A stretch of 64,000 nucleotides of DNA from the IMG/VR virus record IMGVR_UViG_3300035670_000008, positions 124,001 through 188,000 of that record; one strand, 5' to 3'. This document shows positions 493 through 57,300 of the stretch, piece by piece (within the stretch, counting starts at the first letter, position 1; each line of letters begins with the position of its first letter). A model generated the notes under the pieces. The model was given only the letters and a program-made list of their open reading frames with translations. It made no database searches and was not told the origin of the DNA. Both the position numbers and the translations under genes were made by a program.

Positions 493-1662
493 TTATATAT
501 ATTTAGTTACTAATAAATCTATCGTATAAAAGGCTTTATTCTTCCGAACGCCGTAGAACTTGTAGCTAATAATTACCCCGGTGTATTTAATTTCCTCCGG
601 GCCCTCTTTGGCAGTGGGAGCGGAGGCGCCGTTGTTGGAGCTAGACACATAGACTTCAACTTCCGTGCCTGGAAGCACCACCTCATCCATGAACTGCTTG
701 GCCTGTTTGTTGGCGCTGACGTGTTTGTCGAACTGGTCGGTAATTTCGTAGCTACTTAAAAGTACATCCGAGGAGCTCTTTTCGTCTGCAGATTTCCCCT
801 GTCCAATTACCTCCTCCCCAGTCATCGCGCCGATTAGATTTAACATCGCGTTGTTAATTCCAATGGTCTGGACTACTGGGGTAGAGCCGGGGATGACGAT
901 GTTCTTATGTTTTGTATCAATCCGTTGGAGTATCCCTGGCTTCACCTCCGGGACTTCGATGTTCCCAAACTTGGAGCCGCCCCGGTTTTCCATCGCTGGC
1001 AGTAGGTCGAAGGTAAACCGCTTCGGCGTGCCACTCCTACGGTCTTTATAAAGGATATAGAATTTGTCGTCGGCGTTCATCCGAAACGCGGCGTTACTAG
1101 GGATATTAAAGCCCTTATTCGGGTCGATTTTGTTGCCGTTGATTTCGTTCTTGCTCAGTAAGGTAAAGCCACCGTCTTTAATGGGTTGAACCGCCTGGGT
1201 CTTAGGATTTACGTTCTTCTTAGCTAACTCCTCAGTAGTGAGCACTTTATCGTCGGCGCTAGCGTTCCCACCTCCGCCACCTCCGCCTGGGCTATACGTA
1301 TGCTCTGGGAAGTTAGGGTTGTAGCCTGGGATAGCCTTATCTAAAGTGCCTTGTCCAATTGGAATGATTGTGTCTGTGTTCCCTAGATTTAACTCAACGT
1401 TGGCACTATCCGTCGCGTAGGTTTTAACGAGCTTATCAATAGCTAGCTTATTTAAAGCAGCGACACCTGAGGCGACATAATCGTCATAGACTAAGGGGCC
1501 AACCTCCCAAAGTGGTTCGTTATAAACAAACAGCTCTGGATACTCTAACGGGCCTACGACGTACTGGGTCTCTGAGCCGCCCCATAACGGTTCGTTGCCG
1601 TCGACGGTTAAGTCTCCTAAGACTTGGGTAATCGTTTTATCTAGTTGGTTAAGAACAGCCAC
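493..1662 (-). CDS. Putative tail tube initiator / P2 gpU-like baseplate-tube junction protein (389 aa)
   Basis: GTG start, tightly packed in the operon, two genes downstream of the tape-measure-position gene. C-terminal half has a gpU-like pattern (VQTIGINNAMLNLIGAM...YTGVIISYKF...FYTIDLLV) after a poly-Gly linker. The CDS is secure; the function is inferred. Confidence 0.5.
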   Translation of the reverse strand: MAVLNQLDKTITQVLGDLTVDGNEPLWGGSETQYVVGPLEYPELFVYNEPLWEVGPLVYDDYVASGVAALNKLAIDKLVKTYATDSANVELNLGNTDTIIPIGQGTLDKAIPGYNPNFPEHTYSPGGGGGGGNASADDKVLTTEELAKKNVNPKTQAVQPIKDGGFTLLSKNEINGNKIDPNKGFNIPSNAAFRMNADDKFYILYKDRRSGTPKRFTFDLLPAMENRGGSKFGNIEVPEVKPGILQRIDTKHKNIVIPGSTPVVQTIGINNAMLNLIGAMTGEEVIGQGKSADEKSSSDVLLSSYEITDQFDKHVSANKQAKQFMDEVVLPGTEVEVYVSSSNNGASAPTAKEGPEEIKYTGVIISYKFYGVRKNKAFYTIDLLVTKYI

Positions 1663-1666
1663 TGGG

Positions 1667-2197
1667 TTATACCTCTACGACTTCTTTAATAAACTCGATG
1701 GCGTTGGGTGTGATTGTTACTGGGGTGGAGTGTCTTAGGTAGAATAAATCTGCTCGCTCCACTTGAGCCACCGGAATAAATGAGGAGGTGTCGGTGCCGT
1801 GTTTAAACACTGCGTTCTTATATAACCCAATGCTTCGATAGCTTCTAGGAATCCCATCGATTACATCGTTGTGGGTAAGCTGTCCTTCAATTAATACAAA
1901 CCGGCAACGCTGCTTCGTCAACAACTCCAAATCAGGTTCGACTGGCAGGATGATGTAGCCACCGATTGTTAGAGTCGAGCCGGGTACTTCCCGGTCTGTT
2001 AACAGCACTGGTCGGGCGGTTACTTTAATAAAGCCGAAGCACTCTGGCTGGACACTGGAGTATTTATTAGGTGGATCTGGATTTAAGTCTGCTATCCAAG
2101 GCGACGTTTGACCAAAACCAAGCAGCAGTCCGTTAACCGCGTTGACCGTTTCTAGAACGCGTAGCGACTGGGCTTGTTGGAGGACAATAGACTTCAT
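1667..2197 (-). CDS. Putative baseplate structural protein (176 aa)
   Basis: The pattern GFGQTSPW..D.NPDPP......ECFGFIKV...CRFVLIEGQL...YRSIGLY...LFYL resembles small baseplate wedge proteins of large myoviruses. It lies directly downstream of the giant gene. Confidence 0.5.
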   Translation of the reverse strand: MKSIVLQQAQSLRVLETVNAVNGLLLGFGQTSPWIADLNPDPPNKYSSVQPECFGFIKVTARPVLLTDREVPGSTLTIGGYIILPVEPDLELLTKQRCRFVLIEGQLTHNDVIDGIPRSYRSIGLYKNAVFKHGTDTSSFIPVAQVERADLFYLRHSTPVTITPNAIEFIKEVVEV

Positions 2198-2232
2198 ATA
2201 TGTAGCAAAAATAAAACCTCTATATCTATACT

Positions 2233-5200
2233 CTAAGCTATACCTAGGAGTTGGGCGGTGGTCGGGGAGTTGGTGTCCTCCGAGATAATCTGGAAGAACT
2301 CCGCCGGAGACAGTGCGACGTTCGACCCGTCTACAAAGGCAGAGCGGATGTCTGACCGACCCGACATAGCTGTCAACGTTTCGCCGGAGTCTAGGTCTTC
2401 AGCGTCTAGTTCCTCCTCATCTCCTCCTACTAGATTCTGGGATAGATAGTTGTAGATGTTCTGGATGCCGGCGCTAACACTCTTAGCTACGTCCGCCATG
2501 AACTCGTCTTGTGTAACGGTCGTGGTAGGAATTGGTCGTTGGGAGATAACTCCCCCGACGGTCATCCCAATCAACCCGCCCGCTACCTCCGTTATTAAAC
2601 GAGCGGCGCCGGTCTGTCCCGCAACCCCAGGTACACCCGCGAAGCCGGGACGGGCTTGGTCGAAGTGCTGTCCAAGTAGCGTACCAAACGTAGCTCCGCC
2701 TGCGTAGATAAGTTCGCTAACCGCTGCTCTAGCCAGGCCCTCTGTTGGACTGCCGTAGTTCATTAGATACTGCTGCATCCGTCCGAACTGGAGTTTATCT
2801 GCGATTCTCTGGGTGCGGTCGGCAGATTGGGTGTCTTGAGATGGAGACAACAACTGGCGTAGGCTCGATCGCTCGTAGGAGCTAGCCGTAATACCAGACA
2901 TTACGACATCTAGACCTAAGCTAGTCACCTGCTCGGTAAGGGGTATGTCTCCCTGCATCATTGAGAACAACAACGGTACGCCAAGGATACTGACGCCTTC
3001 AGCTAGCCCGTGCATCCGGCTTAGGACTTCATGGCTCTCGGCGCGCTCTTTAGCCGCCCGCTGTACATCTACACTTCTTTGCGTAACGTCCATCAAATTA
3101 TCTCTCGCCTGAGTCACCTCAGCTAACGGACTAACAAAACCAGCAGCCTGTCGGTTCTCTAGATAGGTGTCTAGGTTCTCGTTAAGCTTCTGCTGCACCA
3201 CTTTCTGCTGCTCTACTAGCGCTTCTACCTGTTGTAGCTCCACTTCGCTAGTGTCGGCGGTTATCTGGCCAGTTTTCTCGGTGATAATCTGAGCCATGTT
3301 CTGAGCTAAGCCAGCCATTCCAACCTGGGTGTGGAGGTAGCTGTTGGCGGCTGCCGCGTACTCTAGGGCTCCCATCCCAGCAGTCACCGGTAATCGGTTC
3401 ACTTCTGGCACTGGAGCGGTCGGGCTTGCGGTCGGAGTTTCAACTCCCCCGTAGGTGAGGGCCTGCACTACCTTCTGTTGGAAGTCAATCATCTGGTCTG
3501 GGGTTAGGTTAGCGCCGGCTTCGGACATCATCTGTTGAACGCTGTCTGGTATGGCTCCACCTAACGCTAGAGCAGCGAATACTCCTTTTACTTCTTGATG
3601 GCTTAAACTACCGCCACCGGCAATCTGGCTCTTAACGGCGTCTACAATAGCAGTGACATTATGAGCGAAGGCTTTCGGCAGGGCCTCCCCAGATAACTTA
3701 CCTGCGTCGAGAGCGTATTGTTGGGCACTGAACTCCATAGCCAACGAATTGAAGCTATCGCCGTGTGCTACCAGGGCCTTAGCTAAATTAGTTGTACCCC
3801 CACTGTCTTGAATTTCTGCTACCGCTCGGTTGAACGCTTTGAGCCGGTTCATCATTGGCATCATCAAATCCGTCTGTTGGGAGATACTATGCTCCACCAA
3901 ACTACCGATGACGGCTTTGGTTAACGTCTGTTCACTTAGCTGAGCCCCAGGATTCTCAGGAGTTTGTACGGCTGTGAGTTCCTGTTGGATAGCTGCACTC
4001 ATCGCAGACTGCTGCTCTCGCAGTTTAGCTAGCTCCGTCTGCTGTCTGGCTTCTAGTCCGGCTACGATTTTGTCGGCGGTGTCTACGTTTAGATATTTAT
4101 CCCGTAGTAGCAGCGTGCCTTTACCTTTTATCCGAGCTACTTTCTGTTTAGTAGAGAGACGCTCATCATCTAAAGTATTCTGTATCTCATCTAGAAAGCG
4201 AACGGGCTCAGTTTCTGAATCACCTATCTTAACGTCTAGGTAACTCTGAACGTCTTTGATATAAGACTCCATGCTGGCCAACGTCAATTTACTATCATCG
4301 ACGATCTGACCCTGCTCGTTCACTCCATAGATGTCTAGAGCTTTCCGAGTCACGTCGATGTGGATGTTCTTCATCCCTTCCAACATCGCGTCGGAGATGA
4401 AGTTGGCTTGGAACTTATTCATCATATCCGACAGTACATAAGTCGTTAACTTAGCGTCGTCGATACGCCCGTAGGTAGCTACGCGGGCTTTGATGTGTTC
4501 TGGTAGTGTGCCATCGTCTAGGGCCTTCTGGTAGCTCGCTTTGATAGCTTTCAGCGTACTGCCATAGGAGCTGTTTTCCATGAGGTTAGCTGCGCTATCT
4601 CCTTTACCACTGACGTAATCAGTCAATAATCGCAGAGCGGCAAAGGCCGTTAATCCTTCCGTCTCCTGAACGGAAGGCCCTCTAGTGTCAACTCCATACT
4701 GGTATTGCAGGGCGCTGTTAGCTACCGTGCCTAAGAAGTCTTGACTAACGATTTGAATGAAGCTCTTGCGTTGGTCGTGGTCGGTATAGCGAGACTCCAT
4801 CTGGAGGATATTGGTGTAGCCAACTTCTTTAGAGATAGCTTCCCGGTCGGTGATTCCGATCTCTTTAAGTTCGTCTAGAGCAGACTCACTGATTCGATAG
4901 GACTCAATCCGGCCACTTAGACCGCCCGCCTGTTTCGGTTTCAAGGCGGCGTCCCGGAGATACTGTTGGGTGGTGACCAAGAACCGGTAGCTAACGGCGT
5001 TCCGTTCTTCTGTTTCCCGCATGGCGATTCGCCAGGGGATTATCTCTTCCGTCGTATTATCTACCGCTTCTTGAGTCAACATGGACTGCATTCTGGTTAA
5101 AGCATCTCCCACAGCTGCGTCTGCGTTCTGTTGGATGGCACCAGTAAAGCCCCTCTCAACGGCTGCGTTGAATCCAGCGGTTAGGTCTTTATCCAAAAGC

Positions 5201-8200
5201 ATTCGCTTGAAGCTGATGTCAGCCGATAGCCCACTGCTGATAGGTACGACAGTGTTGTACACCTTACCAAGTAGCGAGCCCCCGGTAATCCCCATGATGG
5301 CCTGCATCGAGCCGAAGTTCTCTGGGTCGGTTACAGTACCCCGCACGTTAGCGAACACCTTATTAACGCTCATCATCGACATTACCGTCGACTCCATCTG
5401 AGCTTGATATTCGGACACCGCCTGGACGTAGTCGTCTTTGGTGTAGCTACCTTTATCTAAGTAGGCTTGGTAGAAGGAGCCAGATTGCTCAAATTGACCA
5501 GACCAATACTCGAAGTTCTCCCGGACGCGGGTCTGCTTCTCGTTGGACAGTTTACCGAAGCCTTCATCCCAAGTTAAGGAGCCTTGTTGGAGCCTGCCGT
5601 CTGTGTCAAACTCAGCAGCATTAATATGAGAGTATTTACCTAACTCCCCGCCCATCAACCCAGTATCGAAGTTGAAGCCGGATAAGGTGTCTACGAACTG
5701 CTTGATTAAGCCGCGTAGCGCCTCGTCTTTAAAGACGGTGTTCTCCGCAATCTCCTTACTACCAATGACTTGTTCTGGCAGCGCTAAGAAGCTGCCGATG
5801 TAGCTACGCAACCCTTCGTAGGCTCGGTTTATCTTCGAGGTTCGGGTGGCTTCTACCTCGCCTAACGCTGCTTTAATCGTCTGCGTAGCGACGGATTTAA
5901 AGTTTTCTGCTTGTTGAATGGACGCAGCCTTCTCGGCCAGCTGCTCTTCTAAAGATTCAACCAAAGCAGGAACTGGGGTTGCCATATTTCTAGCTTTTAC
6001 TAGAGCAGCTTCTATCTGCTCTTTCTCTCTGGATAATCGGCGTAGCTCTACAGTCCGCTGAGCAATCTCCCCGGTCATGTTATTGACTCGGCTGAGGGCG
6101 GCTTGGAAGGAGTCCCCGTCGTAGTCTCCTAAACCAGTAAACTCAAAACCGAAGGCGCTGACTAACATCAAGGCAGAAGCCGAGGTCTCATTAGAGGTTA
6201 GGAAGGTGTTTAGCTCCCGACCCCGTCGGTTCGTTTCTGTAATCTCGATGGCTTGTTTAAAGAGGCTGTTGATTGACTGCCCATCGGTTGGGTTGCTGGT
6301 ATAGAACGGTGCCCCTTGACGGCCTGTTAGGACAGCCCCTAGCCCAGCTCGGTACTCAATCTCATTCTGGACTTTAGCTAGGTTCTCCTGGTTAACTGGT
6401 TGACCACTGATAACGGAGGCAACGATGATGTCGATGTTCTCGTTGTTAACCAGCCGACGGTGTAAGTCTTCCGGGGTGATGTTTGCACTTTCGTTTCCGT
6501 AGTGGTAAGCGTAATCTCTTAGTAGCTTTGCCCACTCACGTAGCTGACTGTTATACTTCGCCAGGTCGGGATAGTCTTGGTATATCTCAGCTTCTTGCTT
6601 CAACAGCCGAACGGTTTGTTGGTCTACTGAGTCAACGACAGCTCCAGTGCTGGGATTTATTATATCCTCGACGCCAGCATACAGCTGCCTAGAAGCTATT
6701 TCAGTTTCGTATTGATTTACTGTGTCTTGGCTTAGCGACCCCATGTAGGCATTGGCTTGGTCTAACCTTGCTTGTTCTACTGGGACATAACGAGCCGTTG
6801 GGTTATTAAGTTGCGCGGCTGCGCGTTCGATGGTTAACTTGCTCTGCTGGTACTCCAACAGATTCTCTGCTACAGTCTGACGGCCTTTAGCGGCTTCTTT
6901 GGTCAGTCCATAATCAATATTCAACCGGAAGTACTCGGGACCCCCGTAAGCAGTACGTTGGGATTCGACGTAACCAATAGCGGCTTCAACCTGGGCTAAG
7001 CGGCTTTGCAGCTCGGCTTGGTTACCTAACACTGATACACCTGATTGAAGTTCGTCGTATTGTCTTTGAGTTAGTTTGTTACTTAGTCCTGTACCTTGGA
7101 TGAAGGTTTCTTCCGCAGTGTAACCGCCAGCTAACCGCCGTTCCAAGTTGGCTTTGATTTCATTTAGCCGGTCAACGATAAAATCGATGTTCTTACCGTC
7201 TTCCTTACCGTAGGCAACTGCTCTAAGCCGGTTAGTGTAATCTATAACCTCCTGCATCTGAGCTAGGTTAGCTGCCTGCTGTTGTGGAGAGCTGGAGTCA
7301 TATTGTACATATCCCCAGCCGATGTACTTCTGCAGCTTTAATTCACTTTCGATAACGTTCTGATAAGCCTTGTGCTCTTCAGACAACCCAGCGTGGGCAG
7401 CCTGGCGAGCTGGTAATTCCGCAGACTTCTCAGCTATCTTCGTGTCTAACTTTCCAATTTCAGTTTTTATTGCGGCTAACTCACCTGGAAGCTTAGTAGT
7501 GTTATCGGCTTGATACCCTTCTAACTCAGTTACTTTATCTCTCATGCCTCCAATTTTTTGGGTGAGGTTCTCAACCTGCCCGGTGAGATACTGGGGCCAA
7601 CCGTCTTCGTTATAGAAGAATGAATTGTCTGGTATTGGCATCCCAACTGGAACGGCTTCAGGGCCTCTTAACCCTAGGTCAGCAACCATAATATTACTTC
7701 TGGCTCTAGCCTGTAGTTGATTTGCTCTTTTCAGCTTGGCATAGAGGCTGTCACCTTGTTCTATAGGGAACAAGACGCTAGCCGCCTTCTGCCTAGCTTT
7801 AACGCCGTCTATACTCTGAGCGTCAAGGTCAGCATCCCCGAACATAAGTGCGCCAAAGAAACCTCCAAATTCACCTCTAGATAAGTATGCAGCTCTTACC
7901 ATCGGAAAGCGGCTATCTCTAACGGTGTTTAGTTGCTGCTCACTTGGATTGAATAAGAAGTTGGTGTAACCTTTGATGTCTGATTGGGTCATTAGCCGCT
8001 CGGTCACGGCGTCTAACCGAGTTAATGCACCTACGTTTTCGGGGGTGACCGTTTGGTTTACACCTAGGTCAGCCAGCCCCGCATTGATATTAGTAAGGAT
8101 GTTGGGTAGTCTGGTGTTGTTTATCTCGTTATAGGCACCCTCTAACGTAGGTATCATATTGTCTACCGCGGCTAACAAACTCTGCCCCCGCGGAGTCAGT

Positions 8201-11200
8201 TGGTTTACAGCTATACGTCCGGTAGCTTGACTAGCTGGGACTACTTCAAAGAGTGCCCTGACGTTATCGTTTACCTGCGCAGCGAACTCTCTTTGTTCTT
8301 GTTGACTGAGTTGATTTAAGTCACTCGGCATATTGGAAGGTATAATACTTCCTTGGGCTACGCTGTTATACCTTGTTAGATGCTTCTCTAAAAACCGCAT
8401 TTGCCCGATAAAGTCCCGTGCGGAGTAGGGCGGCACTTCGTCGGTAAGTCCTATAGCATTTTCTATTGAAAAGACAATTTTATCGTGGTAGGTATCTCCA
8501 AACTGGTTTTGGTTGGTTAGCGTATTAATTTTACGACCTATAGCAGGCAGTACTCTGCTGTTAAGGTTCTGGTAGGTGCTGGCTTGGTTTAAGAGCCAAT
8601 TCCATTTATTATCTACGTTCCGTCTTGCCCGCTGAACTCTGGTGTTGTGTCCCTCTCCTGATTGGTCGTAGGGGTTTCTGATGTCGTAGTAGCGGTAATA
8701 GTTTAGGCTGGCTTGTTGTGTGCGGATATACGCTTCTTGCTCAGCAATTTTTTGCTGTTTATCGACGACTTGAGCTTCTTTCTTAGCGATAGCTGCATTT
8801 TTCTCGTTGATTCTCTGCTGCAGCTCCATCTGGTTTTTAACGTAGCCGCTTCTTGTGTTGTAGTGATAAGCTATCTGCTTACTTCTTTTAGCCTCTAACC
8901 GGCTGATTTCATCCTGTCTATTCTGCAGGGATTCGCCCGATACACCAAAGTTGAGCCGGTCACGCTGTTTAATAATGGTGTTCTCGCCTTTAATGTAGCC
9001 AAGGCTAACGTCTAGGTTTCTAATCCGCTGCTGGTTAACCTTCTGCTCTTCTATGAAGGCAAGCTGTGTTTTGACTGGGTTTTCTGTGCCTAAAGGTACT
9101 ACTCCACTTAGATAGGTGTTTCTTACTTCTACTAGACCCTTAGCTGAACGTAAAGCGTTCTCGATAGTATCTCTATCACCAGAGATTTGGGCTTGCCGTA
9201 GCTTTTGAATCACCGACTCGACTTCGTTCTTAACAGTGCCATCCGTCAGCTCTTGCAGTAGTTCTTGAGCGTATTCAATTTCGTTGGTAATCGTCAGTTC
9301 CATCAGAATCTGACCCTTACTTCCTAAAGCAGCAGCTAAGCGGATGGCTTTAACATCCTTCCTGATAGATTTATCGATGGACGAACTTAGCCGGCGGATA
9401 CCGTTTCCGGCAGTCAGCCCCGCTGCCCGCTCCACCCGGGAGCCCATTCCTACCTCGTCCATCCCGACCAGGAAGCTGTTGACGGCTATATAGGAGGTAC
9501 CGCTCATCCCCATCCGGTTGGCGGTGGCCTGGCGGATGCTGTTTTTGTTGTGTACGAGTTCTACCGCCGTCTCTTTCGACTGCTGCATTAATACCTGCAG
9601 TTCTTGGAGCTCTACAACCTCTTCGTCAGTAATTGTGGAGGTGCCGACACCTTGTAACGCTCCGAGTTGAATCTTATCAATCACGGGCTGTAAGCGTTGT
9701 AGCTTCGCTACTAATTTGAACTGAGCTTCCAATGCCGGGTGGGACTCAGCGTTAAATAGTAGGCTGAGCTTCTGTAGGATATCTAAACCAAGTAACACCC
9801 CTGTCTGAGCGTTACGGTCTGAGCCTACAGTAACTACGTTTAGCCCCCGGCCCTGAGTATCCAAACTATGACGGTCTAATATCTCAATACTTGGCAGGCT
9901 AATCATCCGCGTTGTGCTTAACGATTGCATAATCGTCTTAGCTGACTCGCGTTGTAGTCTCCCTTCAAAGTCGCCTTTATTCCGGTAGTACTCGAACTGC
10001 TGCTGTGCTGATTGGTATAGAGACTCCATACCTTCTAAATATTCCGCGCCAGTATTCATATTGAAGGTATTTTCCACTCGCGTTCTGACTTGCTCCCGGT
10101 AAGTCTCGGTTATGGCATTTAACGCTGCATTCGTAGCTAACGCGCGTGTCCCGGTAGCATTATAGTTTCTCAGATATTCTTTCTGGTAAAGAATATCCTC
10201 ACTATCCTGGTCGTATAGGTGGGTCGTGTTGAGACTGGTATTAATTGGAGACTCCTGCCGAGAATACAACCTATCTAGAAACTCCTCCATGTTAAACTCG
10301 GCTATTCCCAGTTTTGCTTCTTCTAACCGGGTCTCTAGTGCTGCCATAAACGTGGGGTTGTTGGCAGCTTTATGTCTGAACTTTCTGTCCAGCCGAGTTC
10401 TAGTTTCTTCGAGGACTAAGTCAACTCTGCGGTTGATATTAGCCTCGTAGTCTAGGTTATTACCCAGGTTACGGCGAGTGATGTCTGCATAGTCCATCAT
10501 CTGCTGCAGGGCAGGTAGATAGCTGTTACTGTCCTGCTTTTGGTGACCTTGTTTAATAAACTCACTAACGGCTTTAGTCCCTAACGTTCTAGTCTCTACC
10601 CTTCCTGATGAATCAACGTTGCCTGGTAGCTGATGCCGTCCGAAGCTTGTGTAGTGAGTTAGGTACGTATTGATAAAGTCGTAGGTAGTGTTCTGTCCAA
10701 GAGAGAGGCTTAATCCTAGGCGTTTAGTTGTGATATCTTCGTTAAACACCAACGCGGAGAGGTCTGAGTTAATAGCCCGATGCTCCGTAGCGTTAGTTAT
10801 TAGTTGCGGAGTCAACCCTAATTCTGTTTGAGCGATATGTTGCACAACAGCGGCATCCCCGAGGTTGTGCTTCATAATCCCGTAGCTGTCTTGGACTTGA
10901 CGGTGGGTAGGGACAACGTTCTCGTAGACGATGGCTAATTGAACCAAGGCATGTTGAATTGTACCGACGTCGGTCAAATCTTTCGGGTTATAAGCATACA
11001 TCTCTAGTTGCTTAGCAGTTAAGCCTTGGGCATAGTGTCCTTCTAACGCAGTGATATTCTTCATCCCCGCAGGCACTGCGAGTTTACTCGGCTCATACTC
11101 GCCAGGTAATTCAATAAACCGCTGGGTCTGAACGTAGGTGCGGATAGCTTGGTAGACCGCTTCCACCTCATGGAGCATCTGCTCTTCTTCAGAGGTGATA

Positions 11201-32409: not shown

Positions 32410-32422
32410 AGCTTAATCTAGC

Positions 32423-32446
32423 GAGCGGTCGTAGCTACGACCGCTC
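32423..32446. terminator. Perfect 24-bp palindrome between sheath and tube genes (hairpin without a U-tract)
   Basis: GAGCGGTCGTAG-CTACGACCGCTC, 13 nt after the sheath stop. Confidence 0.6.
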
Positions 32447-32481
32447 ATAGACATTTTCAGAAATCTATGGAGTAAGAAGAT

Positions 32482-43477: not shown

Positions 43478-44554
43478 ATGGCCTACACCCCTAAGACCAT
43501 AGATGATGTTCAACAAGCCTACTTCCAAGCGTTAGCCGACGCCAACAGTCAGATTAGGATTGATAAAACTCAGGGGTCGGTAGCCTATACCCTGGGACGG
43601 GCCTCCGCGGCAATCGCAGTACTTCAAGACCTAGAGCTTAAGCGGTTAGCAGACTCAATTAATCTCTCAACTGCAGCGGGAGACCAGCTAGACTCTTTTA
43701 GCAGTTTTGGTATACGTCGGCTGCCTGCACAGTTCGCAACTGGGACAGTGTTGTGTCTATCCGAAGAAGAGCCGGCGGTCTTACAACCTAGAACGATTCT
43801 GACAGACATCTCGACCGGGTCTCAGTTTGTCACTAAGAACACTACCCCAATTATCGTCAGTTACCTAGAAGTCTCCATTGCAATCACAGCGGTATCTACC
43901 GGGGCTGCCTATAACCTTTCGGCGGGCACGGTACTTTATGCAGCTGGACTGCCATATTTAAAGGCAACCGTGGGTACGATTCATACCCAGGAGAACGAGT
44001 ATCTAGGTAGCTTGACGGGCGGCTCTTCTAGAGAAGACGACGATGCTTTCCGAAATCGGATTGCCAGTTGGCTGCTTAGCCACACTACAGCCAGTAAAGG
44101 CGTGGTTATTAACCGGCTGCTGTCCTTCCCTGGGGTTACCAGAGCCTATAGCTATACCAAAGCAGGTGGTGTTATTGAAATCTGGGTCGACTCGATTCAA
44201 ACACTCAACGCTTCCCAGAAGTTGGAGCTGGTGAATTATCTCAAGCCTTATATCTCAGACGGGATTATTGTTGCGCTCTCGCAGCTAACAACTGTCCCCG
44301 CCAATCTGGAGATAGACTTGATTCCGTTTTCAGCCGCGGATATGGCTGTGGTAGCCGCCCGGGTGCGTCAAGTAATTACTCAAGTAATCAGTCAACTAGA
44401 GGTCGGACAGACGCTGGCGCTTTCTGTCATCAATGAAGTTATTAAACCACTGGCGGCTAAAGCCATTGTTACCCAACCTAAGGCTGACATCATCTGTGGG
44501 TTGGGAGAAATACTAATCCCAGGCGAGATTATTGTCCGATACCCCATTAACTAA
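43478..44554 (+). CDS. Baseplate J-like protein (358 aa)
   Basis: TAAGDQLD..FGIRRLPAQFATGTV, GGSSREDDDAFRNRI and FPGVTRAY are baseplate-J hallmarks. Confidence 0.9.
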   Translation: MAYTPKTIDDVQQAYFQALADANSQIRIDKTQGSVAYTLGRASAAIAVLQDLELKRLADSINLSTAAGDQLDSFSSFGIRRLPAQFATGTVLCLSEEEPAVLQPRTILTDISTGSQFVTKNTTPIIVSYLEVSIAITAVSTGAAYNLSAGTVLYAAGLPYLKATVGTIHTQENEYLGSLTGGSSREDDDAFRNRIASWLLSHTTASKGVVINRLLSFPGVTRAYSYTKAGGVIEIWVDSIQTLNASQKLELVNYLKPYISDGIIVALSQLTTVPANLEIDLIPFSAADMAVVAARVRQVITQVISQLEVGQTLALSVINEVIKPLAAKAIVTQPKADIICGLGEILIPGEIIVRYPIN

Positions 44555-44555
44555 A

Positions 44556-51895: not shown

Positions 51896-53677
51896 GTGGC
51901 TTTAGCTGACGGCAATTTAGATTTCGAGGGGTTCTTTACAGGTCTAGCCCAAGACTTGGAGATGCAATTCTCTTCAAGTCTTGCGGCTACGAATATCATC
52001 GACTTCCTAGAGAACGAAGTGGATCAGGTCAGTTGGTTAGGTGAAGGTGGTAGTTTAACCCCGCAACAAATCACACTACTGAAGATATACGACGGGCTGG
52101 AGCTAGATGAAGAGGAGTTAGCTTTAGTTGAGGCTTGGAAAGCGCTAGACCGCACGACCTACGATTTTGAACTAGGCCCTCGCAGACGACAAGCCTTCGT
52201 TATGGAAGCAGGTAGAAATGCGTCTAAGACGTTTATAGGTTCTATCATTTTAGGATACGAGTGGTACAAGCTTTGTATGATGTCAAATCCCCAGGCGTTC
52301 TTCAGGATTGCGGCGTCCACTCTTATCTCCATTTACTGTTTAGCCCCGGCAGCTACCCAAACGAAGAAGACTATCTTTGGTCAATCGAGAGCCTTCCTTA
52401 ATTACATCCCCAAGATTAAACGTTTAATAGACAATAAGAGTATTATCGTCGGGGAAGAAGAAATCAAATATCCAGAGAAGCTACTGTACGTCTATGCCGG
52501 GAACAGTAAAGGTAGCACTCAGGTGGGAAGCCGTGTGATCCTAATGGTAATGGACGAGGTCGCCCGCTTTGAGTCTAAAGACGGAGACTCCAACGCATTA
52601 GAACTGTGGTCTAACGTGGGTGTGTCCGGGATTACCTTTGGTGAGCACGCCCGGCGGGTGGCCATCTCGTCTGCTTGGGAAGAAGGGGATGCTATCCAGA
52701 AGCTATGGAATGCTTCTAAGCTAGAGGATTCTTGGATCGGCTTCCGCTTCCGTACTTGGGATGTTAACCCCAAGATGGACAGGGATAACCCTATTATTGC
52801 AGCGGAGTATAACCTAGACGCTGCCCACGCCAAGCTTGAGTTTGAGGGTGACCGGTCGGCGAACGCCTACTCATTCTTCCACGAAACGGAGGTTCACCGG
52901 GCCTTCAGAGGTAGAGTTGAGTGCGACATCCAAAGGGTTGATTATGGGGATGACCTCATCCGGCTGAAGGTCAACTCGGTGGTACCCGCTACCTATTTAA
53001 CGTATATGCACCTCGACCCTGCTGTGGTGAGAGATGCCTATGCGATGGCGTTTGGCCATGGGACTACAGACTCAGATGGACGTAAGGTCGTTGTGATTGA
53101 CGGACTGGCCGCTTGGGAGCCGAAGCCTGGCCAAGCAGTAAGCTTACTCAACGTCTACGACATCATCTATGGGGTTCACACCCAACGTCCGCTGTATAAG
53201 GTTACTACAGACCATGCACAACAAGCTGAGACGATTCAACGGCTGCGGATGAATGGGTTGAACGCGAGTAGCATTTTCTTCTCCAATCGTATGCAGGTGG
53301 AGATATACGACGCTACTAGGAAGCTACTTCATGAGAACCGATTGATTTTACCTAAAGACTCTCCCTGGACGAACCTCCTTAAGCTAGAGATGATGACGGT
53401 TCAGTATGACCAACAAAAAGGTAAGATTTACCATAATGCGGACAGCTCGAAGGATTTAATTGACTGCGTATGTTCTGTGGTCTGGCATATTGCAGGCAAC
53501 CAAACAGGCACAGGTAACTCCGTTGTGGTCAACCGGAAGTCTAGACTAGGCAACAATCCTATTGACCGGTTTAGCCGTATAGAAGACGAAGACAGCTTCC
53601 AGACGAGCCGCCGAGAGTTGGTGTCTTCACTACGGAGCGGAGCGTCAGCCTCGTTGTTTGAAGAGTACGACTTCTAG
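51896..53677 (+). CDS. terL: Terminase large subunit (593 aa)
   Basis: Walker A-like AGRNASKT, Walker B VILMVMDE, motif III ISSA, and RNase-H-fold nuclease acidic residues (YMHLDP, TTDH, SKDLIDC). Confidence 0.92.
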   Translation: MALADGNLDFEGFFTGLAQDLEMQFSSSLAATNIIDFLENEVDQVSWLGEGGSLTPQQITLLKIYDGLELDEEELALVEAWKALDRTTYDFELGPRRRQAFVMEAGRNASKTFIGSIILGYEWYKLCMMSNPQAFFRIAASTLISIYCLAPAATQTKKTIFGQSRAFLNYIPKIKRLIDNKSIIVGEEEIKYPEKLLYVYAGNSKGSTQVGSRVILMVMDEVARFESKDGDSNALELWSNVGVSGITFGEHARRVAISSAWEEGDAIQKLWNASKLEDSWIGFRFRTWDVNPKMDRDNPIIAAEYNLDAAHAKLEFEGDRSANAYSFFHETEVHRAFRGRVECDIQRVDYGDDLIRLKVNSVVPATYLTYMHLDPAVVRDAYAMAFGHGTTDSDGRKVVVIDGLAAWEPKPGQAVSLLNVYDIIYGVHTQRPLYKVTTDHAQQAETIQRLRMNGLNASSIFFSNRMQVEIYDATRKLLHENRLILPKDSPWTNLLKLEMMTVQYDQQKGKIYHNADSSKDLIDCVCSVVWHIAGNQTGTGNSVVVNRKSRLGNNPIDRFSRIEDEDSFQTSRRELVSSLRSGASASLFEEYDF

Positions 53678-53688
53678 CCACTAGGTTA

Positions 53689-53702
53689 GAGGTAGCTACC
53701 TC
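53689..53702. terminator. 14-bp perfect palindrome after terL
   Basis: GAGGTAG-CTACCTC, flanked by CTAG on both sides. It has the same GTAGCTAC core as the post-sheath palindrome. Confidence 0.4.
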
Positions 53703-53713
53703 AGTACTAGACT

Positions 53714-54370: not shown

Positions 54371-54372
54371 AC

Positions 54373-57300
54373 ATGGCTATCGATTACATCGACGCGGTTG
54401 GCGGTAGACTCTCTGTTAAGCTTGAGAGCTCGCACCTAAACGAGTCTGCCGGTAATATGTCTATCGGCGGTCAAGTCGAGCGCACTAAGGAAGACCCGTA
54501 TGGTGTCGTTTCCTACATGCACGATACGAACAGGCTGGCTCGCTTTGTAGACGGCCTGCGGGATATTGAAGTCATTCAGTTCGCAGCTCCGTTCAACAAC
54601 ATCCAACGTTCCGTTAGCCCCTCCCCAAATCCTTTAAGCAATATGCTGGAGGGGGCATACAACAGCGCGAAATGGATGCAGGCACTGTTCCCTTCAGAAG
54701 TCAGTATGTTAATGAAGACTAAACAACTGAAGTCTTTGGAGACTGACCTCACTAACTTTGACAGTACTGTCCAGAATCCTATTAAACTATACGAAGCGAG
54801 AGAAGCATTACTTAACAACCAGATTCAAGCCAAGTACCATAAGAACAAGGATGGATCTTTCCCGGAAGTTACCGGGGCACAACTAGACCGTCTGCAGCAC
54901 TCGAAGTTGTTAGAAGGTTTATACTCTAAGGAGAAACAAGCCCAACTACAAGCGGAGTTCAAAGAAAAAGGGTTTAACGTACAGGCCCCTACTGGAAAAG
55001 TACAAACAACCACAGCAATGTTTACCGATACCTCCTTTCTAGGGATATCGATTACAGGTTCTGGTGGAGCTTTAGGTAGCTACGAAGACTACACCTTAGG
55101 GTTTGAGAATCCGAATATCATTCGAGACTTAGCCTACTTTAGAGAAAACAAATCGACCATTGATTACTACGAGCGAGAGCCCGTCCCCGGCGTTACGATT
55201 ACAGGTAACCTCTCTATTTATAAGAAGCGGGTTGAAGCTTTAAGAGAAGCTAATGAGATTCAGCGCATCTTGGGGAAAGGTAAAGATGGATTGTTTGTCT
55301 ACGTCGCCTCCCCTTCTATGGACTGGAATGAGCAACCACGGGAGCATAACTACCGGGACACTATCCAGAGGAAGAACGTAGGTGCCTACATTAAGGAGCT
55401 GCAGAAAACTGGAACCCAGGGCATCTTAAGTTTAGGGATTGACAAGAAGCGGATTAACATCCCTGCTGGAGAGAAGACTAAACTTCTACAGAACGCTTAC
55501 ATTGGTGACTCTAGGTCTGGCCGGCGAGACCACGGAAACATGCAGTATATTAACTTGCGAGGTACACCGAAAGACCGGATTAGCAAAGAGGCTCAAGAGG
55601 AGCTAGCCCGTAAAGGTCTACTGGACAAGGCGGTCAAAGGTATCTCTACTTTATCCATCGGACAGTACCGGATTGTTGGGGACGAGTCGATTAACCAAGA
55701 GACGACCATCGATTTAAACAAAGTTAGTCCCGCGTATAGGGAGGCAGCAGAAGGTATTGCTCAAGGCAGCATCGGCGGGAAGAACTTCTACCAACTTAGG
55801 AAGGACGTAGCTAAGGAAGGTATTGCCGGCGCGCTGCTCCAAGAGTTTTACACTCCTACGTTTAGCGACCGGCAGAAGCGGGGCTGGGAGCAAGAAGGGT
55901 TGCTACCTAATATGCCGCTGTCTATGCCCGCCTCGTTCTTTAGATACTTCGAGCCGGGAACCAAAACCCGTATCTACACAGACCGCTTTAAAGCGCTAAC
56001 CGGTTACCGCCCAGAAGGTGCTCAGGGCTACGTTCTTCGTACTTTAGATGAAAAACTTAGCGACCCTGGGTTGGGCAACCAAATCAACTATATGTTCCGC
56101 CAGCGGGACTTGTACGAGGTGGGTAAAGGCGCGGTAGGAACATTAGCCGCGGGTGTAGGCCGGTTTATAGACACAGCCACTGGCTTCTACACTATGCAGA
56201 CTATTAAGGCTCGGGAGTCTGGGCAACTTAGCGGCTCGTTACGCAAGCTGTATGAATCTAGACAGCGAGACCCTTATGAACAGACTGAGAAGAGAGGCTT
56301 TTTCGAGAATCTTACTACTAAAGCTGTGGCTATCACTGGCTCTACTGCTACAGCTATGGCGTCTTACTTTGGGGTGACTCATGCTTATACGATGGCAAAA
56401 GCGGCGGTAGAGCAGGTTGGTGTGGACTATGTGCTTGACTCCATCGCCTCCGGGAAGGTCGGCGGAGCCAGTAAGTTATTTCTAGAACAACTCTTGGATG
56501 AATCTCATAGTAATTTGATTACCGGAGCTAACATCATTTATAACGCGGAGTCCGGTGCCCTCCGCACTATTGAGAACACAGGGAAGGCACTAGACGAGTA
56601 CTTTGACTTGTCGACTCGGTCTAGTCTAAAAGCGCTTCAATTAGACGACGAGCTGGTCGATGAAGTCGTTAAGGAGTCTGATTTCATTGGTGGGATTAGA
56701 GGAAAAGGGATAGCCGCGCCGACGGAGCAGCAAGCTGTGCTTAATCTCATTGGCGAGCTAGACACCTCTGCCGCAGCTAGAGATAACACCGTAGCCGGGT
56801 TGGTTACTAAGAAACTAGAAGCTCGGTTAGCTGAGTTTGCTAAGAGACCTGGCACTGCGACTGGGGCGAAGCCACCAGCAGGTGAAATCAGGGGTTGGGT
56901 AACCGAAATCTATAAAGAGCTAGGAATCCACCGCGATGCTGGAACTATTGACTTAGGGCGTGGGGTAGACCACCCAACCATTGCCGCTAGAGTCCAGCAA
57001 CCAGCGGGCTTCGTCAACATCGCCTCTGTCCGCCGTATGGATACTGGCAACCTCCATAATATGTTTATCCCTCTTCTGGACGAGGTTGTATTTGACAAAA
57101 ATAACCAGCAGTACCGAACAGCAAAAGAGAACTTACTCCGGCTGGCTAAGGCCTCACCGATACTGTCTTATAAACAAACCGCAAATAACTTATCAGCTGC
57201 TTCTGACCTTAAAATCTACAACTACGGCTACGAACGTATCCGACAACTAGCCGAGGTGTTTGACGAACTAGCAGAACAACTCCCGGCTAACCCGTTGATG

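What the first reader, a model, noticed from the sequence alone, without database searches (positions are those of the whole stretch)
748..55083. Highly iterated palindrome GTAGCTAC, often nested in longer perfect palindromes
Seen: a manual scan found at least 17 copies (748, 4475, 5443, 5800, 13882, 21295, 29971, 32431, 34545, 36464, 37209, 40040, 41528, 43403, 46861, 53692, 55076), against about one expected for a uniform 8-mer in 64 kb. They occur in both possible coding phases (Val-Ala-Thr and x-Ser-Tyr) and in intergenic DNA. Four are cores of longer perfect palindromes: 24 bp (32423-32446), 16 bp (40036-40051, coding), 14 bp (37206-37219, coding) and 14 bp (53689-53702). TAGCTA is also very frequent. 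Known: cyanobacterial HIP1 (GCGATCGC) is a comparable iterated octamer linked to methyltransferase sites. Inference: this is a phage-specific HIP-like signal, possibly tied to an AGCT methylase, a DNA-binding or packaging protein, or recombination.
Basis: partly seen in the sequence, partly recalled or inferred. Interest (0 to 1): 0.6.

Follow-up and report, generated by a model that had tools for sequence, protein, structure and literature searches.

The report
Phage-specific iterated palindrome GTAGCTAC
A 216-kb cyanobacterial virus carries the palindrome GTAGCTAC about 15 times more often than chance; codon use does not explain it and 401 cyanobacterial genomes do not share it, so it resembles a weak, virus-owned version of the cyanobacterial HIP1 repeat, of unknown cause.

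Summary
The window belongs to a 216,563-bp myovirus-like jumbo cyanophage with 51 copies, where GTAGCTAC ties with a (CA)n repeat as the most frequent 8-mer.

Exact dicodon-preserving shuffles give 16.6 ± 3.4 copies (maximum 26), against 47 in genes. The bias acts on the DNA: both open reading phases and non-coding DNA are enriched alike. After shuffling synonymous codons, TAGCTA is the most enriched of all 6-mers.

There are two layers. A clade-wide short-range signature lifts TAGCTA about 3-4 fold, even in Ma-LMM01 and a Microcoleus phage. On top sits a 2-3 fold octamer surplus, clear in this phage and weaker in its closest relative.

Sites are placed at random and are conserved no better than background. 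None of 401 cyanobacterial genomes exceeds about 2.6 copies per 100 kb; the phage has 23.5. No DNA methyltransferase or Vsr gene was found.

By identical measures the word is 4-10 times weaker and less sharp than real HIP1. I read it as a phage-owned "mini-HIP". The factor behind the octamer surplus is inferred, not identified. Interest is moderate.

The parts
748..755 (.). GTAGCTAC copy inside the ORF 493..1662 (-), read as Ser-Ser-Tyr (phase xGT AGC TAC).
4475..4482 (.). Copy in the 5112-aa ORF 2233..17571 (-), read as Val-Ala-Thr.
5443..5450 (.). Copy in the 5112-aa ORF (-), read as Gly-Ser-Tyr.
5800..5807 (.). Copy in the 5112-aa ORF (-), read as Arg-Ser-Tyr.
13882..13889 (.). Copy in the 5112-aa ORF (-), read as Gly-Ser-Tyr.
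21295..21302 (.). Copy in the ORF 21121..21897 (+), read as Val-Ala-Thr; extends to the 10-bp palindrome CGTAGCTACG.
29971..29978 (.). Copy in the tail-sheath ORF 28822..32409 (+), read as Val-Ala-Thr.
32423..32446 (.). 24-bp perfect palindrome with GTAGCTAC (32431-32438) at its centre. It is intergenic: 14 nt after the sheath stop codon and 36 nt before the next start codon. As RNA it folds into a 10-bp stem with an AGCU loop (-21.5 kcal/mol with 15-nt flanks). It has no T-run and does not match a canonical terminator or promoter.
34545..34552 (.). Copy in the ORF 33320..36655 (+), read as Gly-Ser-Tyr. It is one of the few sites conserved in the closest relative G001.
36464..36471 (.). Copy in the ORF 33320..36655 (+), read as Val-Ala-Thr.
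37206..37219 (.). 14-bp perfect palindrome ATGGTAGCTACCAT (core 37209-37216) inside the ORF 36659..38551 (+), read as Gly-Ser-Tyr. It is not conserved in G001.
40036..40051 (.). 16-bp perfect palindrome GACCGTAGCTACGGTC (core 40040-40047) inside the ORF 39034..40284 (+), read as Arg-Ser-Tyr.
41528..41535 (.). Copy in the ORF 40271..42673 (+), read as Val-Ala-Thr.
43403..43410 (.). Copy in the ORF 42961..43476 (+), read as Gly-Ser-Tyr.
46861..46868 (.). Copy in the ORF 44532..47132 (+), read as Cys-Ser-Tyr.
53689..53702 (.). 14-bp perfect palindrome GAGGTAGCTACCTC (core 53692-53699). It is intergenic: 12 nt after the stop codon of the ORF 51896..53677 and 11 nt before the start codon at 53714. 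It does not match a canonical terminator.
55076..55083 (.). Copy in the giant ORF that starts at 54373 (+; 6944 codons in the whole genome), read as Gly-Ser-Tyr.

Best explanation
GTAGCTAC is a phage-owned "mini-HIP": the top word of a strand-symmetric bias that acts on the DNA sequence of this jumbo cyanophage lineage. It has two layers.

Layer 1 (shown). The whole Ma-LMM01-like clade shares a short-range signature: excess TA and AG/CT steps, and excess AGC/GCT and TAG/CTA triplets in every reading phase and in non-coding DNA. This lifts AGCT about 2-fold and TAGCTA about 3-4 fold, and by itself predicts 16-23 of the 51 octamers. I infer that it reflects the phages' own replication and repair machinery; they encode PolA, primase, helicases and RecA.

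Layer 2 (shown as statistics, cause inferred). About 25-30 further copies of (C)GTAGCTAC(G) form a surplus specific to the octamer or decamer. It is clear in this phage and weaker in its closest relative. A bias that depends on 8-10 bp read as a dyad is beyond ordinary neighbour-dependent mutation. I therefore infer a lineage-specific homodimeric protein that recognises this word, either by binding it or by modifying it. Selection or biased repair would then act on the number of sites and not on their positions.

Sites arise and decay anywhere in the genome: their placement looks Poisson and their conservation equals background. The word is not the host's HIP and is not tied to any recognisable phage DNA methyltransferase.
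For: DNA-level bias, not codon usage.
- Coding sequence holds 47 copies. Codon permutation gives 4.6, synonymous-codon permutation 8.4 and exact dicodon-preserving shuffles 16.6 +/- 3.4.
- The two usable phases are enriched alike: GTA-GCT 97 observed against 41 expected, and its reverse complement AGC-TAC 87 against 33.
- AGCT is enriched about 1.5-fold in all three phases.
- About 13 kb of non-coding DNA holds 13 TAGCTA and 4 GTAGCTAC, the same density as genes.
- After synonymous shuffling, TAGCTA is the most enriched of all 4096 6-mers (203 against 69). TAGCTACG, GTAGCTAC and CGTAGCTA are the top 8-mers.
- The 47 coding sites lie in about 40 genes with unrelated peptide contexts.

Layer 1 is clade-wide.
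- The relative abundance of TA is 1.05-1.53 and of AG/CT 1.11-1.24 in all five phages tested, against 0.79 and 0.81 in a cyanobacterial genome (MAG G006).
- TAGCTA is 2.7-3.2 fold enriched in Ma-LMM01 and My-WqHQDG, but 0.17-0.47 fold in lambda and Nostoc phage A1.

Layer 2 is specific to this word.
- Joining the two half-sites at the central AGCT predicts 22.9 copies; 51 are observed (P = 3e-7). Apart from a (CA)n repeat and its own overlapping or one-mismatch relatives (TAGCTACG, GTAGCCAC), it is the only strong outlier among all 8-mers.
- It also ranks first in the closest relative G001 (8 against 2.4, P = 3e-3, modest given 256 palindromes tested) and is not among the top outliers in G004.

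Sites turn over.
- Over 46 kb aligned with G001, conservation equals background: TAGCTA 12 against 12.2 expected, AGCT 121 against 129, the octamer 4 of 10 against 2.4.
- Sites are uniform within genes (KS p = 0.70) and their spacing has a coefficient of variation of 0.95.

The word belongs to the phage, not the host.
- 401 cyanobacterial genomes reach at most about 2.6 copies per 100 kb, against 23.5 in the phage.
- G006, the cyanobacterial genome holding the closest relative of the phage's TnpB transposase-like gene, is rich in HIP1 and has TAGCTA at 0.7-0.9 fold.
Against: - No candidate reader protein was identified, so the core of layer 2 is inference.
- Most one-mismatch neighbours are themselves enriched 1.3-3.6 fold, and the peak is only 4.3 times the mean neighbour. 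A purely compositional cause, with a modest non-additive term, is therefore not excluded.
- The lack of positional conservation is what a neutral process predicts.
- Seven sites lie in 14-24 bp perfect palindromes whose arms are unrelated to each other. That is symmetry without base preference, which points to a hairpin or template-switch effect and not to read-out by a protein.
- The sample of relatives is small: one partial close relative and a few distant ones.
Confidence: 0.4

Rival explanations
1. A purely neutral signature. The whole excess, including the octamer surplus, would be the equilibrium of context-dependent mutation and repair by the phage replisome, combined with purging of restriction-type palindromes. 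No protein would read the word and it would have no function.
For: - The enrichment is graded: AGCT, then TAGCTA, then the octamer, then the decamer. The maximal-order Markov expectation is 43.6 against 51 observed.
- Neighbours and half-sites are enriched too.
- Sites are not conserved above background and their placement looks Poisson.
- The TA and AG/CT signature is clade-wide.
- The relative G004 enriches a different set of palindromes (TACTAGTA, GCTGCAGC, TTACGTAA).
Against: - The half-sites cooperate 2.2-2.9 fold (51 against 22.9; 47 against 16.6), and this is specific to one word among all 8-mers.
- Known neighbour effects on mutation span 1-2 nt, not 8-10 (general knowledge).
- Real HIP1 shows the same nested structure by the same measures, so a graded enrichment does not argue for neutrality.
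Confidence: 0.3
2. A true HIP mechanism linked to methylation. A methyltransferase specific for AGCT or TAGCTA, either from the host or an unrecognised phage enzyme, would act together with a methyl-dependent or very-short-patch-type mismatch repair that ratchets near-cognate sites into the full palindrome.
For: - The analogy with HIP1 and the alternate HIPs, each accompanied by a cognate methyltransferase (Elhai 2015, PMC4390886).
- The word is palindromic with a 4-bp core that is a classic type II site.
- Nostoc phage A1 shows that a cyanophage can carry a HIP (27 HIP1 copies in 50 kb), and an N6-adenine methyltransferase is annotated in its record.
Against: - The phage has no C5, N4/N6, D12, Dam or N6_Mtase family methyltransferase and no Vsr.
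- A host-encoded system should mark the host as well, yet none of 401 cyanobacterial genomes is enriched.
- The transition neighbours are not depleted: AGTT/AACT are at 1.08, and the TAACTA/TAGTTA variants at 1.61, like the transversion variants.
Confidence: 0.12
3. A function at the hairpin or RNA level. The word would be the preferred tip of intercistronic stem-loops (mRNA 3'-end or stability elements, or sites of cruciform formation), and the many plain copies would be by-products.
For: - All 4 intergenic copies lie 12-70 nt downstream of a stop codon, inside palindromes of 10-24 bp.
- 7 of 51 sites lie in perfect palindromes of 14 bp or more, against 2.2% of other 8-bp palindromes (P = 1e-4).
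- Every relative has a strong hairpin at the same place after the sheath gene.
Against: - 44 of 51 sites have random flanks and 47 lie inside genes.
- An 8-nt palindrome cannot fold into a hairpin on its own.
- The relatives' sheath hairpins use other loops.
- Neither of the two intergenic palindromes scanned (32423-32446 and 53689-53702) matches a canonical terminator.
- G001 (0 of 8) and G004 (1 of 17) do not show the link with long palindromes.
Confidence: 0.1
4. A by-product of codon usage, codon pairs or protein motifs.
For: - GCT, AGC, GTA and TAC are well-used codons.
- The amino-acid sequence alone contributes about 1.8 fold (4.6 to 8.4 expected).
Against: - The count exceeds codon, synonymous and exact dicodon shuffles.
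- The two phases are mirror images of each other and equally enriched.
- Non-coding DNA has the same density.
- Peptide contexts are unrelated.
- Off-frame TGA is not enriched, so this is not an "ambush" of hidden stop codons against frameshifted reading.
Confidence: 0.02

Closest known systems
HIP1 (GCGATCGC) and alternate HIPs of cyanobacteria (Xu et al. 2018, PMC5861425; Elhai 2015, PMC4390886)
   Same: - It is a palindromic octamer and the most frequent 8-mer of its genome.
- It occurs in several reading phases and between genes, beyond codon-based expectation.
- Its sub-words are enriched in a nested way. Real HIP1 also has a half-site join ratio of 2.6-4.6 and a maximal-order expectation close to the observed count, when measured here in the same way.
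   Different: - It is carried by a virus and was not enriched in the 401 cyanobacterial genomes searched.
- Its core is AGCT with 50% G+C, not the GC-rich CGATCG.
- It is 15.5-fold enriched, against 67- and 144-fold for HIP1.
- The motif-to-neighbour ratio is 4.3, against 30-38 for HIP1.
- Only 24% of the central 6-mers lie within the octamer, against 61-71% for HIP1.
- No cognate methyltransferase was found.
- Sites are not conserved above background, whereas HIP1 sites are (PMC5861425).
Genome signature: dinucleotide and short-oligonucleotide relative abundance specific to a replicon (Karlin; cited from memory)
   Same: The bias is strand-symmetric, genome-wide, independent of reading phase and shared by a phage clade that encodes its own replication proteins.
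   Different: A signature of range 2-4 nt predicts only 6-14 copies, and even the 6-mer and dicodon levels predict only 17-25. The octamer-level surplus lies outside the usual scope of a signature.
Word bias in E. coli created by Dcm/Vsr very-short-patch repair (Bhagwat & McClelland 1992; Merkl et al. 1992; cited from memory)
   Same: A soft, roughly 1.5-2 fold, frame-independent enrichment of a short palindrome-related word through a process acting on the DNA.
   Different: That bias needs a C5 methyltransferase and Vsr, and it depletes the T-for-C neighbours. Here neither gene is present and AGTT/AACT are not depleted.
Genome-wide recognition words: Chi, DNA uptake sequences, and the stoperators of Cluster A mycobacteriophages (cited from memory)
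   Same: A short word repeated about every 4 kb through genes and spacers. In those systems a specific protein reads the word and its number or density matters.
   Different: - Those words are asymmetric and orientation-biased; this one is a palindrome.
- Chi and uptake sequences mark the host chromosome, and stoperators are positionally conserved and bound by a known repressor.
- Here the cyanobacterial genomes searched are not enriched, positions are not conserved and no binding protein is known.
Avoidance of restriction sites in phage genomes
   Same: The same genome shows it strongly: GATC 119 against 843 expected, TTCGAA 0, GGATCC 1, GTGCAC 1 and ATGCAT 2, with GGWCC also strongly depleted in the synonymous-shuffle scan.
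   Different: The sign is opposite: GTAGCTAC, TAGCTA and AGCT are enriched. Palindromic 8-mers as a class are not in excess (730 observed against 777 expected).

Membership tests
HIP (highly iterated palindrome, HIP1 type) | A palindromic octamer that is the most abundant 8-mer of the genome. | tested here: met
   51 copies. It ties with (CA)n words from a single microsatellite as the top 8-mer and is the top palindromic 8-mer by a factor of 2.
HIP (highly iterated palindrome, HIP1 type) | Over-representation of 15- to 300-fold (Xu et al. 2018, PMC5861425). | tested here: inconclusive
   It is 15.5-fold enriched over base composition, at the bottom of that range. It is 5.6-fold over synonymous shuffles and 2.8-fold over dicodon shuffles. 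By the same measure HIP1 is 67-fold enriched in the MAG G006 and 144-fold in Nostoc phage A1.
HIP (highly iterated palindrome, HIP1 type) | Present within and between ORFs, and not explained by a peptide or by codon usage. | tested here: met
   22 Val-Ala-Thr, 25 x-Ser-Tyr and 4 intergenic copies, with unrelated peptide contexts. The count exceeds all codon-aware null models.
HIP (highly iterated palindrome, HIP1 type) | Sites conserved between related genomes above background (the evidence for selection in Xu et al. 2018). | tested here: not met
   In G000 against G001 (46 kb aligned): TAGCTA 12 conserved against 12.2 expected, AGCT 121 against 129, and the octamer 4 of 10 against 2.4 (3 of the 4 lie in a block of 92% identity). 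The sample is small.
HIP (highly iterated palindrome, HIP1 type) | A cognate DNA methyltransferase in the same genome (Elhai 2015, PMC4390886). | tested here: not met
   PF00145, PF01555, PF02086, PF05869 and PF02384 gave no match in the 96%-complete phage genome, and their controls were positive. The MT-A70 search was uninformative because its control was silent. The host is unknown, so a host enzyme cannot be tested.
HIP (highly iterated palindrome, HIP1 type) | A sharp peak, with the motif far more frequent than its one-mismatch neighbours. | tested here: not met
   The ratio to the mean neighbour is 4.3 here, against 30 (G006) and 38 (Nostoc phage A1) for HIP1.
Word bias from very-short-patch repair (Dcm/Vsr type) | Vsr and C5-methyltransferase genes, and depletion of the deamination neighbours. 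| tested here: not met
   No PF03852 and no PF00145 match. AGTT/AACT are at 1.08 of the synonymous-shuffle expectation.
Chi-like or uptake-sequence-like oriented host word | An asymmetric word that is also over-represented in the host chromosome. | tested here: not met
   The word is a palindrome. The half-sites GTAGC/GCTAC are at 0.6-0.8 fold in the MAG G006, and the octamer is at or below about 2.6 per 100 kb in 401 cyanobacterial genomes.
REP- or MITE-like mobile palindromic repeat | A repeated unit longer than the core, with conserved flanks, mostly intergenic. | tested here: not met
   The flanks show no shared sequence beyond the preference for C before and G after the octamer, and the arms of the long palindromes differ from one another. 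47 of 51 copies lie inside genes.
Iterated operator or stoperator sites | Sites bound by a phage repressor and positionally conserved among relatives. | tested here: inconclusive
   Positional conservation is not met. Protein binding cannot be tested with these tools.
Intrinsic terminator (for the intergenic palindromes) | A G+C-rich stem-loop followed by a run of T. | tested here: not met
   The consensus scan reports no terminator-like site at 32423-32446 or at 53689-53702. The stems fold well (-21.5 and -10.3 kcal/mol, with flanks) but have no T-run.

The most novel reading that the evidence does not exclude
A virus maintains its own self-marking word. The iterated palindrome (C)GTAGCTAC(G) would be read by a phage-encoded dimeric protein and used for a transaction on the phage's own DNA, for example recombination between co-infecting relatives, genome condensation or packaging, or telling phage DNA from host DNA. 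That would be a viral counterpart of HIP1, Chi or uptake sequences, evolving rapidly between sister lineages.
Probability: 0.15. Interest if true: 0.7.

Novelty: new variant of a known kind. Interest (0 to 1): 0.42.

Why it matters
The cause and function of iterated palindromes such as HIP1 remain unsettled after about 30 years. This is a second, independent case in a small and tractable replicon:
- it is 216 kb and encodes its own replication genes;
- it has no recognisable cognate methyltransferase;
- it has sister lineages that differ in the strength of the signal.

If a reader protein or a biased repair activity exists, its gene should lie in this phage genome and could be found by comparing relatives that have or lack the octamer surplus. 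If the excess proves neutral, it shows how far a replicon-specific mutational signature can mimic a HIP, which matters for how HIP-like statistics are interpreted.

In practice the word, together with the strong depletion of GATC, GGWCC and TTCGAA, is a compositional fingerprint for this uncultured jumbo cyanophage lineage.

Tried and rejected
- Codon, synonymous-codon and dicodon causes: rejected.
- A repeated protein motif or paralogous domains: rejected. The 47 coding sites lie in about 40 genes with unrelated peptide contexts.
- "Ambush" of off-frame stop codons: rejected. Off-frame TAG is enriched 1.28-1.33 fold, but TGA is not and TAA is enriched in only one phase. CTA, AGC and GCT rise equally.
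- A host HIP: not found in 401 cyanobacterial genomes or in the five named candidates.
- A phage DNA methyltransferase or Vsr: none found. The MT-A70 search had a silent control and says nothing. Pfam sweeps of 123 ORFs of 130-1300 aa listed no DNA methyltransferase, but 13 and 6 matched families were not displayed.
- A very-short-patch-type depletion of neighbours: not seen.
- Positional logic (position within the gene, spacing, coding strand, 20-kb bins): none found.
- A general excess of palindromic 8-mers: none (730 observed against 777 expected).
- Opposite palindrome usage in the phage and in the cyanobacterial genome G006: not significant.
- A promoter or terminator role for the intergenic copies: no consensus match.
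- Literature: no paper in the library treats GTAGCTAC as an iterated word. The hits listed (20 of 359 papers) are primer-type or otherwise unrelated occurrences.
- Sequencing runs: only DNA contigs from one study are available, so transcript ends, nicks and base modifications could not be examined.
- Host identification through TnpB gave only "cyanobacterium": the best match is 80% identical, to an uncultured MAG. The ends of G003, which IMG/VR classes as a provirus, have phage-like composition (GATC still strongly depleted), so no host flank was evident.
- A first attempt at a per-gene Euler shuffle timed out. It was replaced by an analytic expectation and by an exact shuffle using Wilson's algorithm.

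Full report
**Observation.** One hundred dinucleotide-preserving shuffles give a mean of 2.0 and a maximum of 6. The four longer perfect palindromes are also real: 32423-32446 (24 bp), 40036-40051 (16 bp), 37206-37219 (14 bp) and 53689-53702 (14 bp). Five window copies read Val-Ala-Thr, ten read x-Ser-Tyr and two are intergenic. The third phase would contain an in-frame TAG stop and is never used.

**What the DNA is.** The window is bases 124001-188000 of a single 216,563-bp IMG/VR virus record, rated 96% complete by CheckV.
- It encodes a Mu-like portal, a head protease, a major capsid protein, a tail sheath and a baseplate.
- It also encodes PolA, primase, helicases, RecA, ribonucleotide reductase and a ThyA-family enzyme.
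- It carries a sigma factor whose best match is the cyanobacterial RpoD/SigA family.
- It has three giant ORFs of 4240, 5112 and 6944 codons.
- The only isolate phages with a related capsid protein (27-30% identity) are Microcoleus phage My-WqHQDG and the Microcystis Ma-LMM01 group.
- Its TnpB transposase-like gene has only cyanobacterial relatives among the 80 best loci. The best match, at 80%, is in an uncultured cyanobacterial MAG.

It is therefore an uncultured jumbo cyanomyovirus. The host species is unknown.

**Is it more than chance and codon usage?** Genome-wide there are 51 copies, which ties for the most frequent 8-mer. The words it ties with all come from one (CA)53 microsatellite.
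- Markov models of order 0, 3, 5 and 6 predict 3.3, 14, 25 and 43.6 copies.
- Coding sequence holds 47 copies. Permuting codons within genes gives 4.6 +/- 2.1. Permuting only synonymous codons, which keeps each protein and each gene's codon usage, gives 8.4 +/- 2.6.
Exact Euler shuffles that keep every codon-pair count give 16.6 +/- 3.4 (maximum 26 of 300), against 47 observed. For the window's genes they give 4.9 +/- 2.0, against 19 observed (analytic version).

The finding survives its own refutation test.

**The bias acts on the DNA.**
- The two usable phases are reverse complements of each other and are enriched alike: GTA-GCT 97 against 41 expected, AGC-TAC 87 against 33.
- AGCT is about 1.5-fold enriched in all three phases.
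- Off-frame TAG, CTA, AGC and GCT are all raised 1.2-1.45 fold, while off-frame TGA is not. This is not a hidden-stop effect.
- About 13 kb of non-coding DNA carries 13 TAGCTA and 4 GTAGCTAC, the same density as genes.
- When all k-mers are scored against synonymous shuffles, TAGCTA is the single most enriched 6-mer (203 against 69). AGCTA and TAGCT are the top 5-mers. TAGCTACG, GTAGCTAC and CGTAGCTA are the top 8-mers.
- In the same scan the most depleted words are GATC-containing words, GGWCC, GGCC, AATT, TTCGAA and TCCGGA, which is classic restriction avoidance.
- The 47 coding sites lie in about 40 different genes with unrelated peptide contexts.

**Two layers.**

*Layer 1* is a short-range signature shared by the whole clade.
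- The relative abundance of TA is 1.05-1.53 and of AG/CT 1.11-1.24 in G000, two metagenomic relatives, Ma-LMM01 and My-WqHQDG. In a cyanobacterial MAG the values are 0.79 and 0.81.
- All five steps of TAGCTA are favoured steps. TAGCTA is 2.7-4 fold enriched in all these phages, but 0.17-0.47 fold in lambda and Nostoc phage A1.

*Layer 2* is specific to the octamer.
- Joining the two half-sites at the central AGCT predicts 22.9 copies, against 51 observed (P = 3e-7). Apart from the (CA)n repeat and its own relatives TAGCTACG and GTAGCCAC, GTAGCTAC is the only strong outlier among all 65,536 8-mers.
- Other xxAGCTxx palindromes show no such cooperation (97 against about 93).
- The word also ranks first in the closest relative G001 (8 against 2.4, a modest P of 3e-3) and is not among the top outliers in G004.
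- The word tends to extend to CGTAGCTACG: 12 copies against 0.2 expected from base composition.

**Comparison with real HIP1 by identical measures.**

| Measure | GTAGCTAC in this phage | HIP1 in cyanobacterial MAG G006 | HIP1 in Nostoc phage A1 |
|---|---|---|---|
| Copies per 100 kb | 23.5 | 82 | 54 |
| Enrichment over base composition | 15.5-fold | 67-fold | 144-fold |
| Motif count / mean one-mismatch neighbour | 4.3 | 30 | 38 |
| Share of the central 6-mers lying within the octamer | 24% | 61% | 71% |
| Half-site join ratio | 2.2 | 2.6 | 4.6 |

For both words the maximal-order Markov expectation is close to the observed count. The nested structure is therefore HIP-like, but the signal is 4-10 times weaker and much less sharp.

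**Placement and conservation.**
- Sites are uniformly placed within genes (KS p = 0.70). Their spacing is close to exponential (coefficient of variation 0.95). AGCT and TAGCTA are evenly enriched in every 20-kb bin.
- G001 is collinear with G000 over 133-208 kb at 64-92% identity. Over the 46 kb aligned, motif sites are conserved exactly as much as any window of the same length: TAGCTA 12 against 12.2 expected, AGCT 121 against 129, and the octamer 4 of 10 against 2.4, three of the four in a block of 92% identity.
- HIP1 sites, by contrast, are reported to be conserved above background (PMC5861425).

Here sites turn over. Whatever keeps the excess acts on the number of sites, not on their positions.

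**Relatives and hosts.**
- The octamer density per 100 kb is 23.5 in G000, 10 in G001, 9 in G004, 3.4 in G003 and about 2 in G002 and G005.
- G004 enriches other palindromes instead: CTGCAG, CAGCTG, GCTGCAGC and TACTAGTA.
- In 401 genomes drawn across the cyanobacterial phylum the highest density is about 2.6 per 100 kb, and most are at or below the chance level (named candidates).
- G006, the genome holding the closest TnpB relative, is rich in HIP1 (180 copies in 220 kb) with AGCT at 0.74-0.80 fold and TAGCTA at 0.7-0.9 fold. The phage has only 2 HIP1 copies.

The word belongs to the phage lineage and not to a cyanobacterial HIP system, among the genomes searched.

**Methylase hypothesis.**
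- Six-frame searches with the DNA-methyltransferase families PF00145, PF01555, PF02086, PF05869 and PF02384, and with Vsr (PF03852), found nothing, while their controls were positive. The MT-A70 search was uninformative.
- The only SAM methyltransferase, at G000:86022-86855, is of the UbiE/BioC type.
- The deamination neighbours are not depleted.

A link to a methylase is therefore unsupported, although a novel enzyme or an unknown host enzyme cannot be excluded.

**Long palindromes (unexplained).**
- Seven of the 51 sites are cores of perfect palindromes of 14-24 bp, which is 13.7% against 2.2% for all other 8-bp palindromes (P = 1e-4). Five of the twelve palindromes of 16 bp or more in the genome have this core.
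- Their arms are unrelated in sequence. The other 44 sites have random flanks.
- All four intergenic copies lie 12-70 nt downstream of a stop codon, inside palindromes of 10-24 bp.
- Every relative has a strong hairpin after the sheath gene, but with other sequences and loops.
- The two intergenic palindromes in the window match neither a canonical terminator nor a promoter.
- G001 (0 of 8) and G004 (1 of 17) do not share this association.

Symmetry without base preference points to an effect at the level of the nucleic acid (hairpin, cruciform or template switching). The simplest reading is that the free loop positions of existing hairpins drift to the favoured word. I could not test this.

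**Mechanism.** What is shown:
- the bias acts on the DNA and is strand-symmetric;
- it is phage-specific;
- it has two layers;
- its sites turn over.

What is inferred:
- Layer 1 reflects the clade's own replication and repair machinery.
- Layer 2 depends on 8-10 bp read as a dyad, so it needs a homodimeric protein that recognises the word, with pressure on the number of sites. My confidence in this composite explanation is 0.4.

The main rival is a fully neutral signature (0.3). It fits the lack of conservation and the enriched neighbours but not the cooperation specific to one word. A methylation-linked HIP mechanism (0.12) and a hairpin or RNA role (0.1, at best for a subset of sites) follow. 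A codon artefact is excluded (0.02).

**Novelty and limits.** I found no paper that describes this word as an iterated motif and none that describes a phage-specific HIP. The two HIP papers read do not mention AGCT-core HIPs or phages. I class the finding as a new variant of a known kind, the over-represented palindromic octamer. The limits are:
- gene calls come from a greedy ORF picker (212 ORFs, 94% coverage);
- only one partial close relative was available;
- the host is unknown;
- only assembled DNA contigs from one study exist, so modifications, nicks and transcripts could not be examined.

The references to Karlin's genome signature, very-short-patch-repair word bias, Chi and uptake sequences, and stoperators are from memory and are leads, not tests.

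Noticed in passing
window 2233-17571 (-); window 54373-64000 (+, continues to G000:199204); G000:103066-115785 (-): Three giant ORFs of 5112, 6944 and 4240 codons in one phage genome. The 5112-aa product has no Pfam hit on record, and none of the three was examined further here.
   Followed up: no
whole genome G000, including the window: Very strong palindrome avoidance: GATC 119 against 843 expected, TTCGAA 0, GGATCC 1, GTGCAC 1, ATGCAT 2, TCCGGA 3, TCGCGA 3. GGWCC (57 copies) and GGCC are also strongly depleted, and HIP1 occurs only twice. The avoided set resembles known Nostocales restriction specificities such as AvaII, AvaIII and AsuII/NspV (from memory), which hints at the host group.
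   Followed up: partly
G000:91924-92029 and G000:118008-118070 (outside the window): A perfect (CA)53 microsatellite of 106 bp, and a (GAA)21 run of 63 bp inside a small ORF.
   Followed up: no
G000:72898-74103 (-): A 402-aa ORF of the TnpB / IS605-OrfB (Cas12f-like) type inside the phage. Its closest relatives are all cyanobacterial; the best, at 80% amino-acid identity, is in an uncultured MAG.
   Followed up: partly
G000:84903-85907 (-), 86022-86855 (+), 88664-89830 (-), 89914-91269 (-): A cluster with a cyanobacterial-type RpoD/SigA-family sigma factor, a UbiE/BioC-like SAM methyltransferase, a GT4 glycosyltransferase and a PhoH2-like helicase. ThiF plus a prokaryotic E2 domain occur elsewhere in the genome.
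   Followed up: partly
window 32410-32481 and the homologous spacers in L002, L015, L016 and L023: Every relative has a strong hairpin immediately downstream of the tail-sheath gene, each with a different sequence. In L015, L016 and L023 a T-rich tail follows, as in a terminator. In this phage the hairpin is a perfect 24-bp palindrome without a T-run.
   Followed up: partly
L013:9266-9719 (G000 about 207266-207719): ARAGORN calls a permuted tmRNA that overlaps the tRNA-Met and tRNA-Trp genes, which is probably an artefact. The phage also has a tRNA-Ala(TGC).
   Followed up: no
L136 (Nostoc phage A1, KU234533.1 1-50000): This unrelated cyanophage carries the host-type HIP1 27 times in 50 kb (144-fold enriched), and an N6-adenine methyltransferase is annotated in its record. 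Cyanophages can therefore carry a true HIP.
   Followed up: partly
G004 (L110-L119) and loci L017-L019, L024: A sister lineage does not avoid GATC. It enriches CTGCAG (4.6-fold), CAGCTG (3.5-fold) and the 8-mers TACTAGTA, GCTGCAGC and TTACGTAA, so each lineage has its own set of favoured palindromes.
   Followed up: partly
L001 against L002/L014 (G000 against G001): The two phages encode an identical 430-aa capsid protein, yet the surrounding DNA is only 64-92% identical. This points to mosaic recombination or very strong purifying selection on the capsid gene.
   Followed up: no
genome-wide: The one-mismatch word GTAGCCAC is itself an outlier (26 against 9.4 by the half-site join test), twice as frequent as its reverse complement GTGGCTAC (13) on the + strand.
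   Followed up: no
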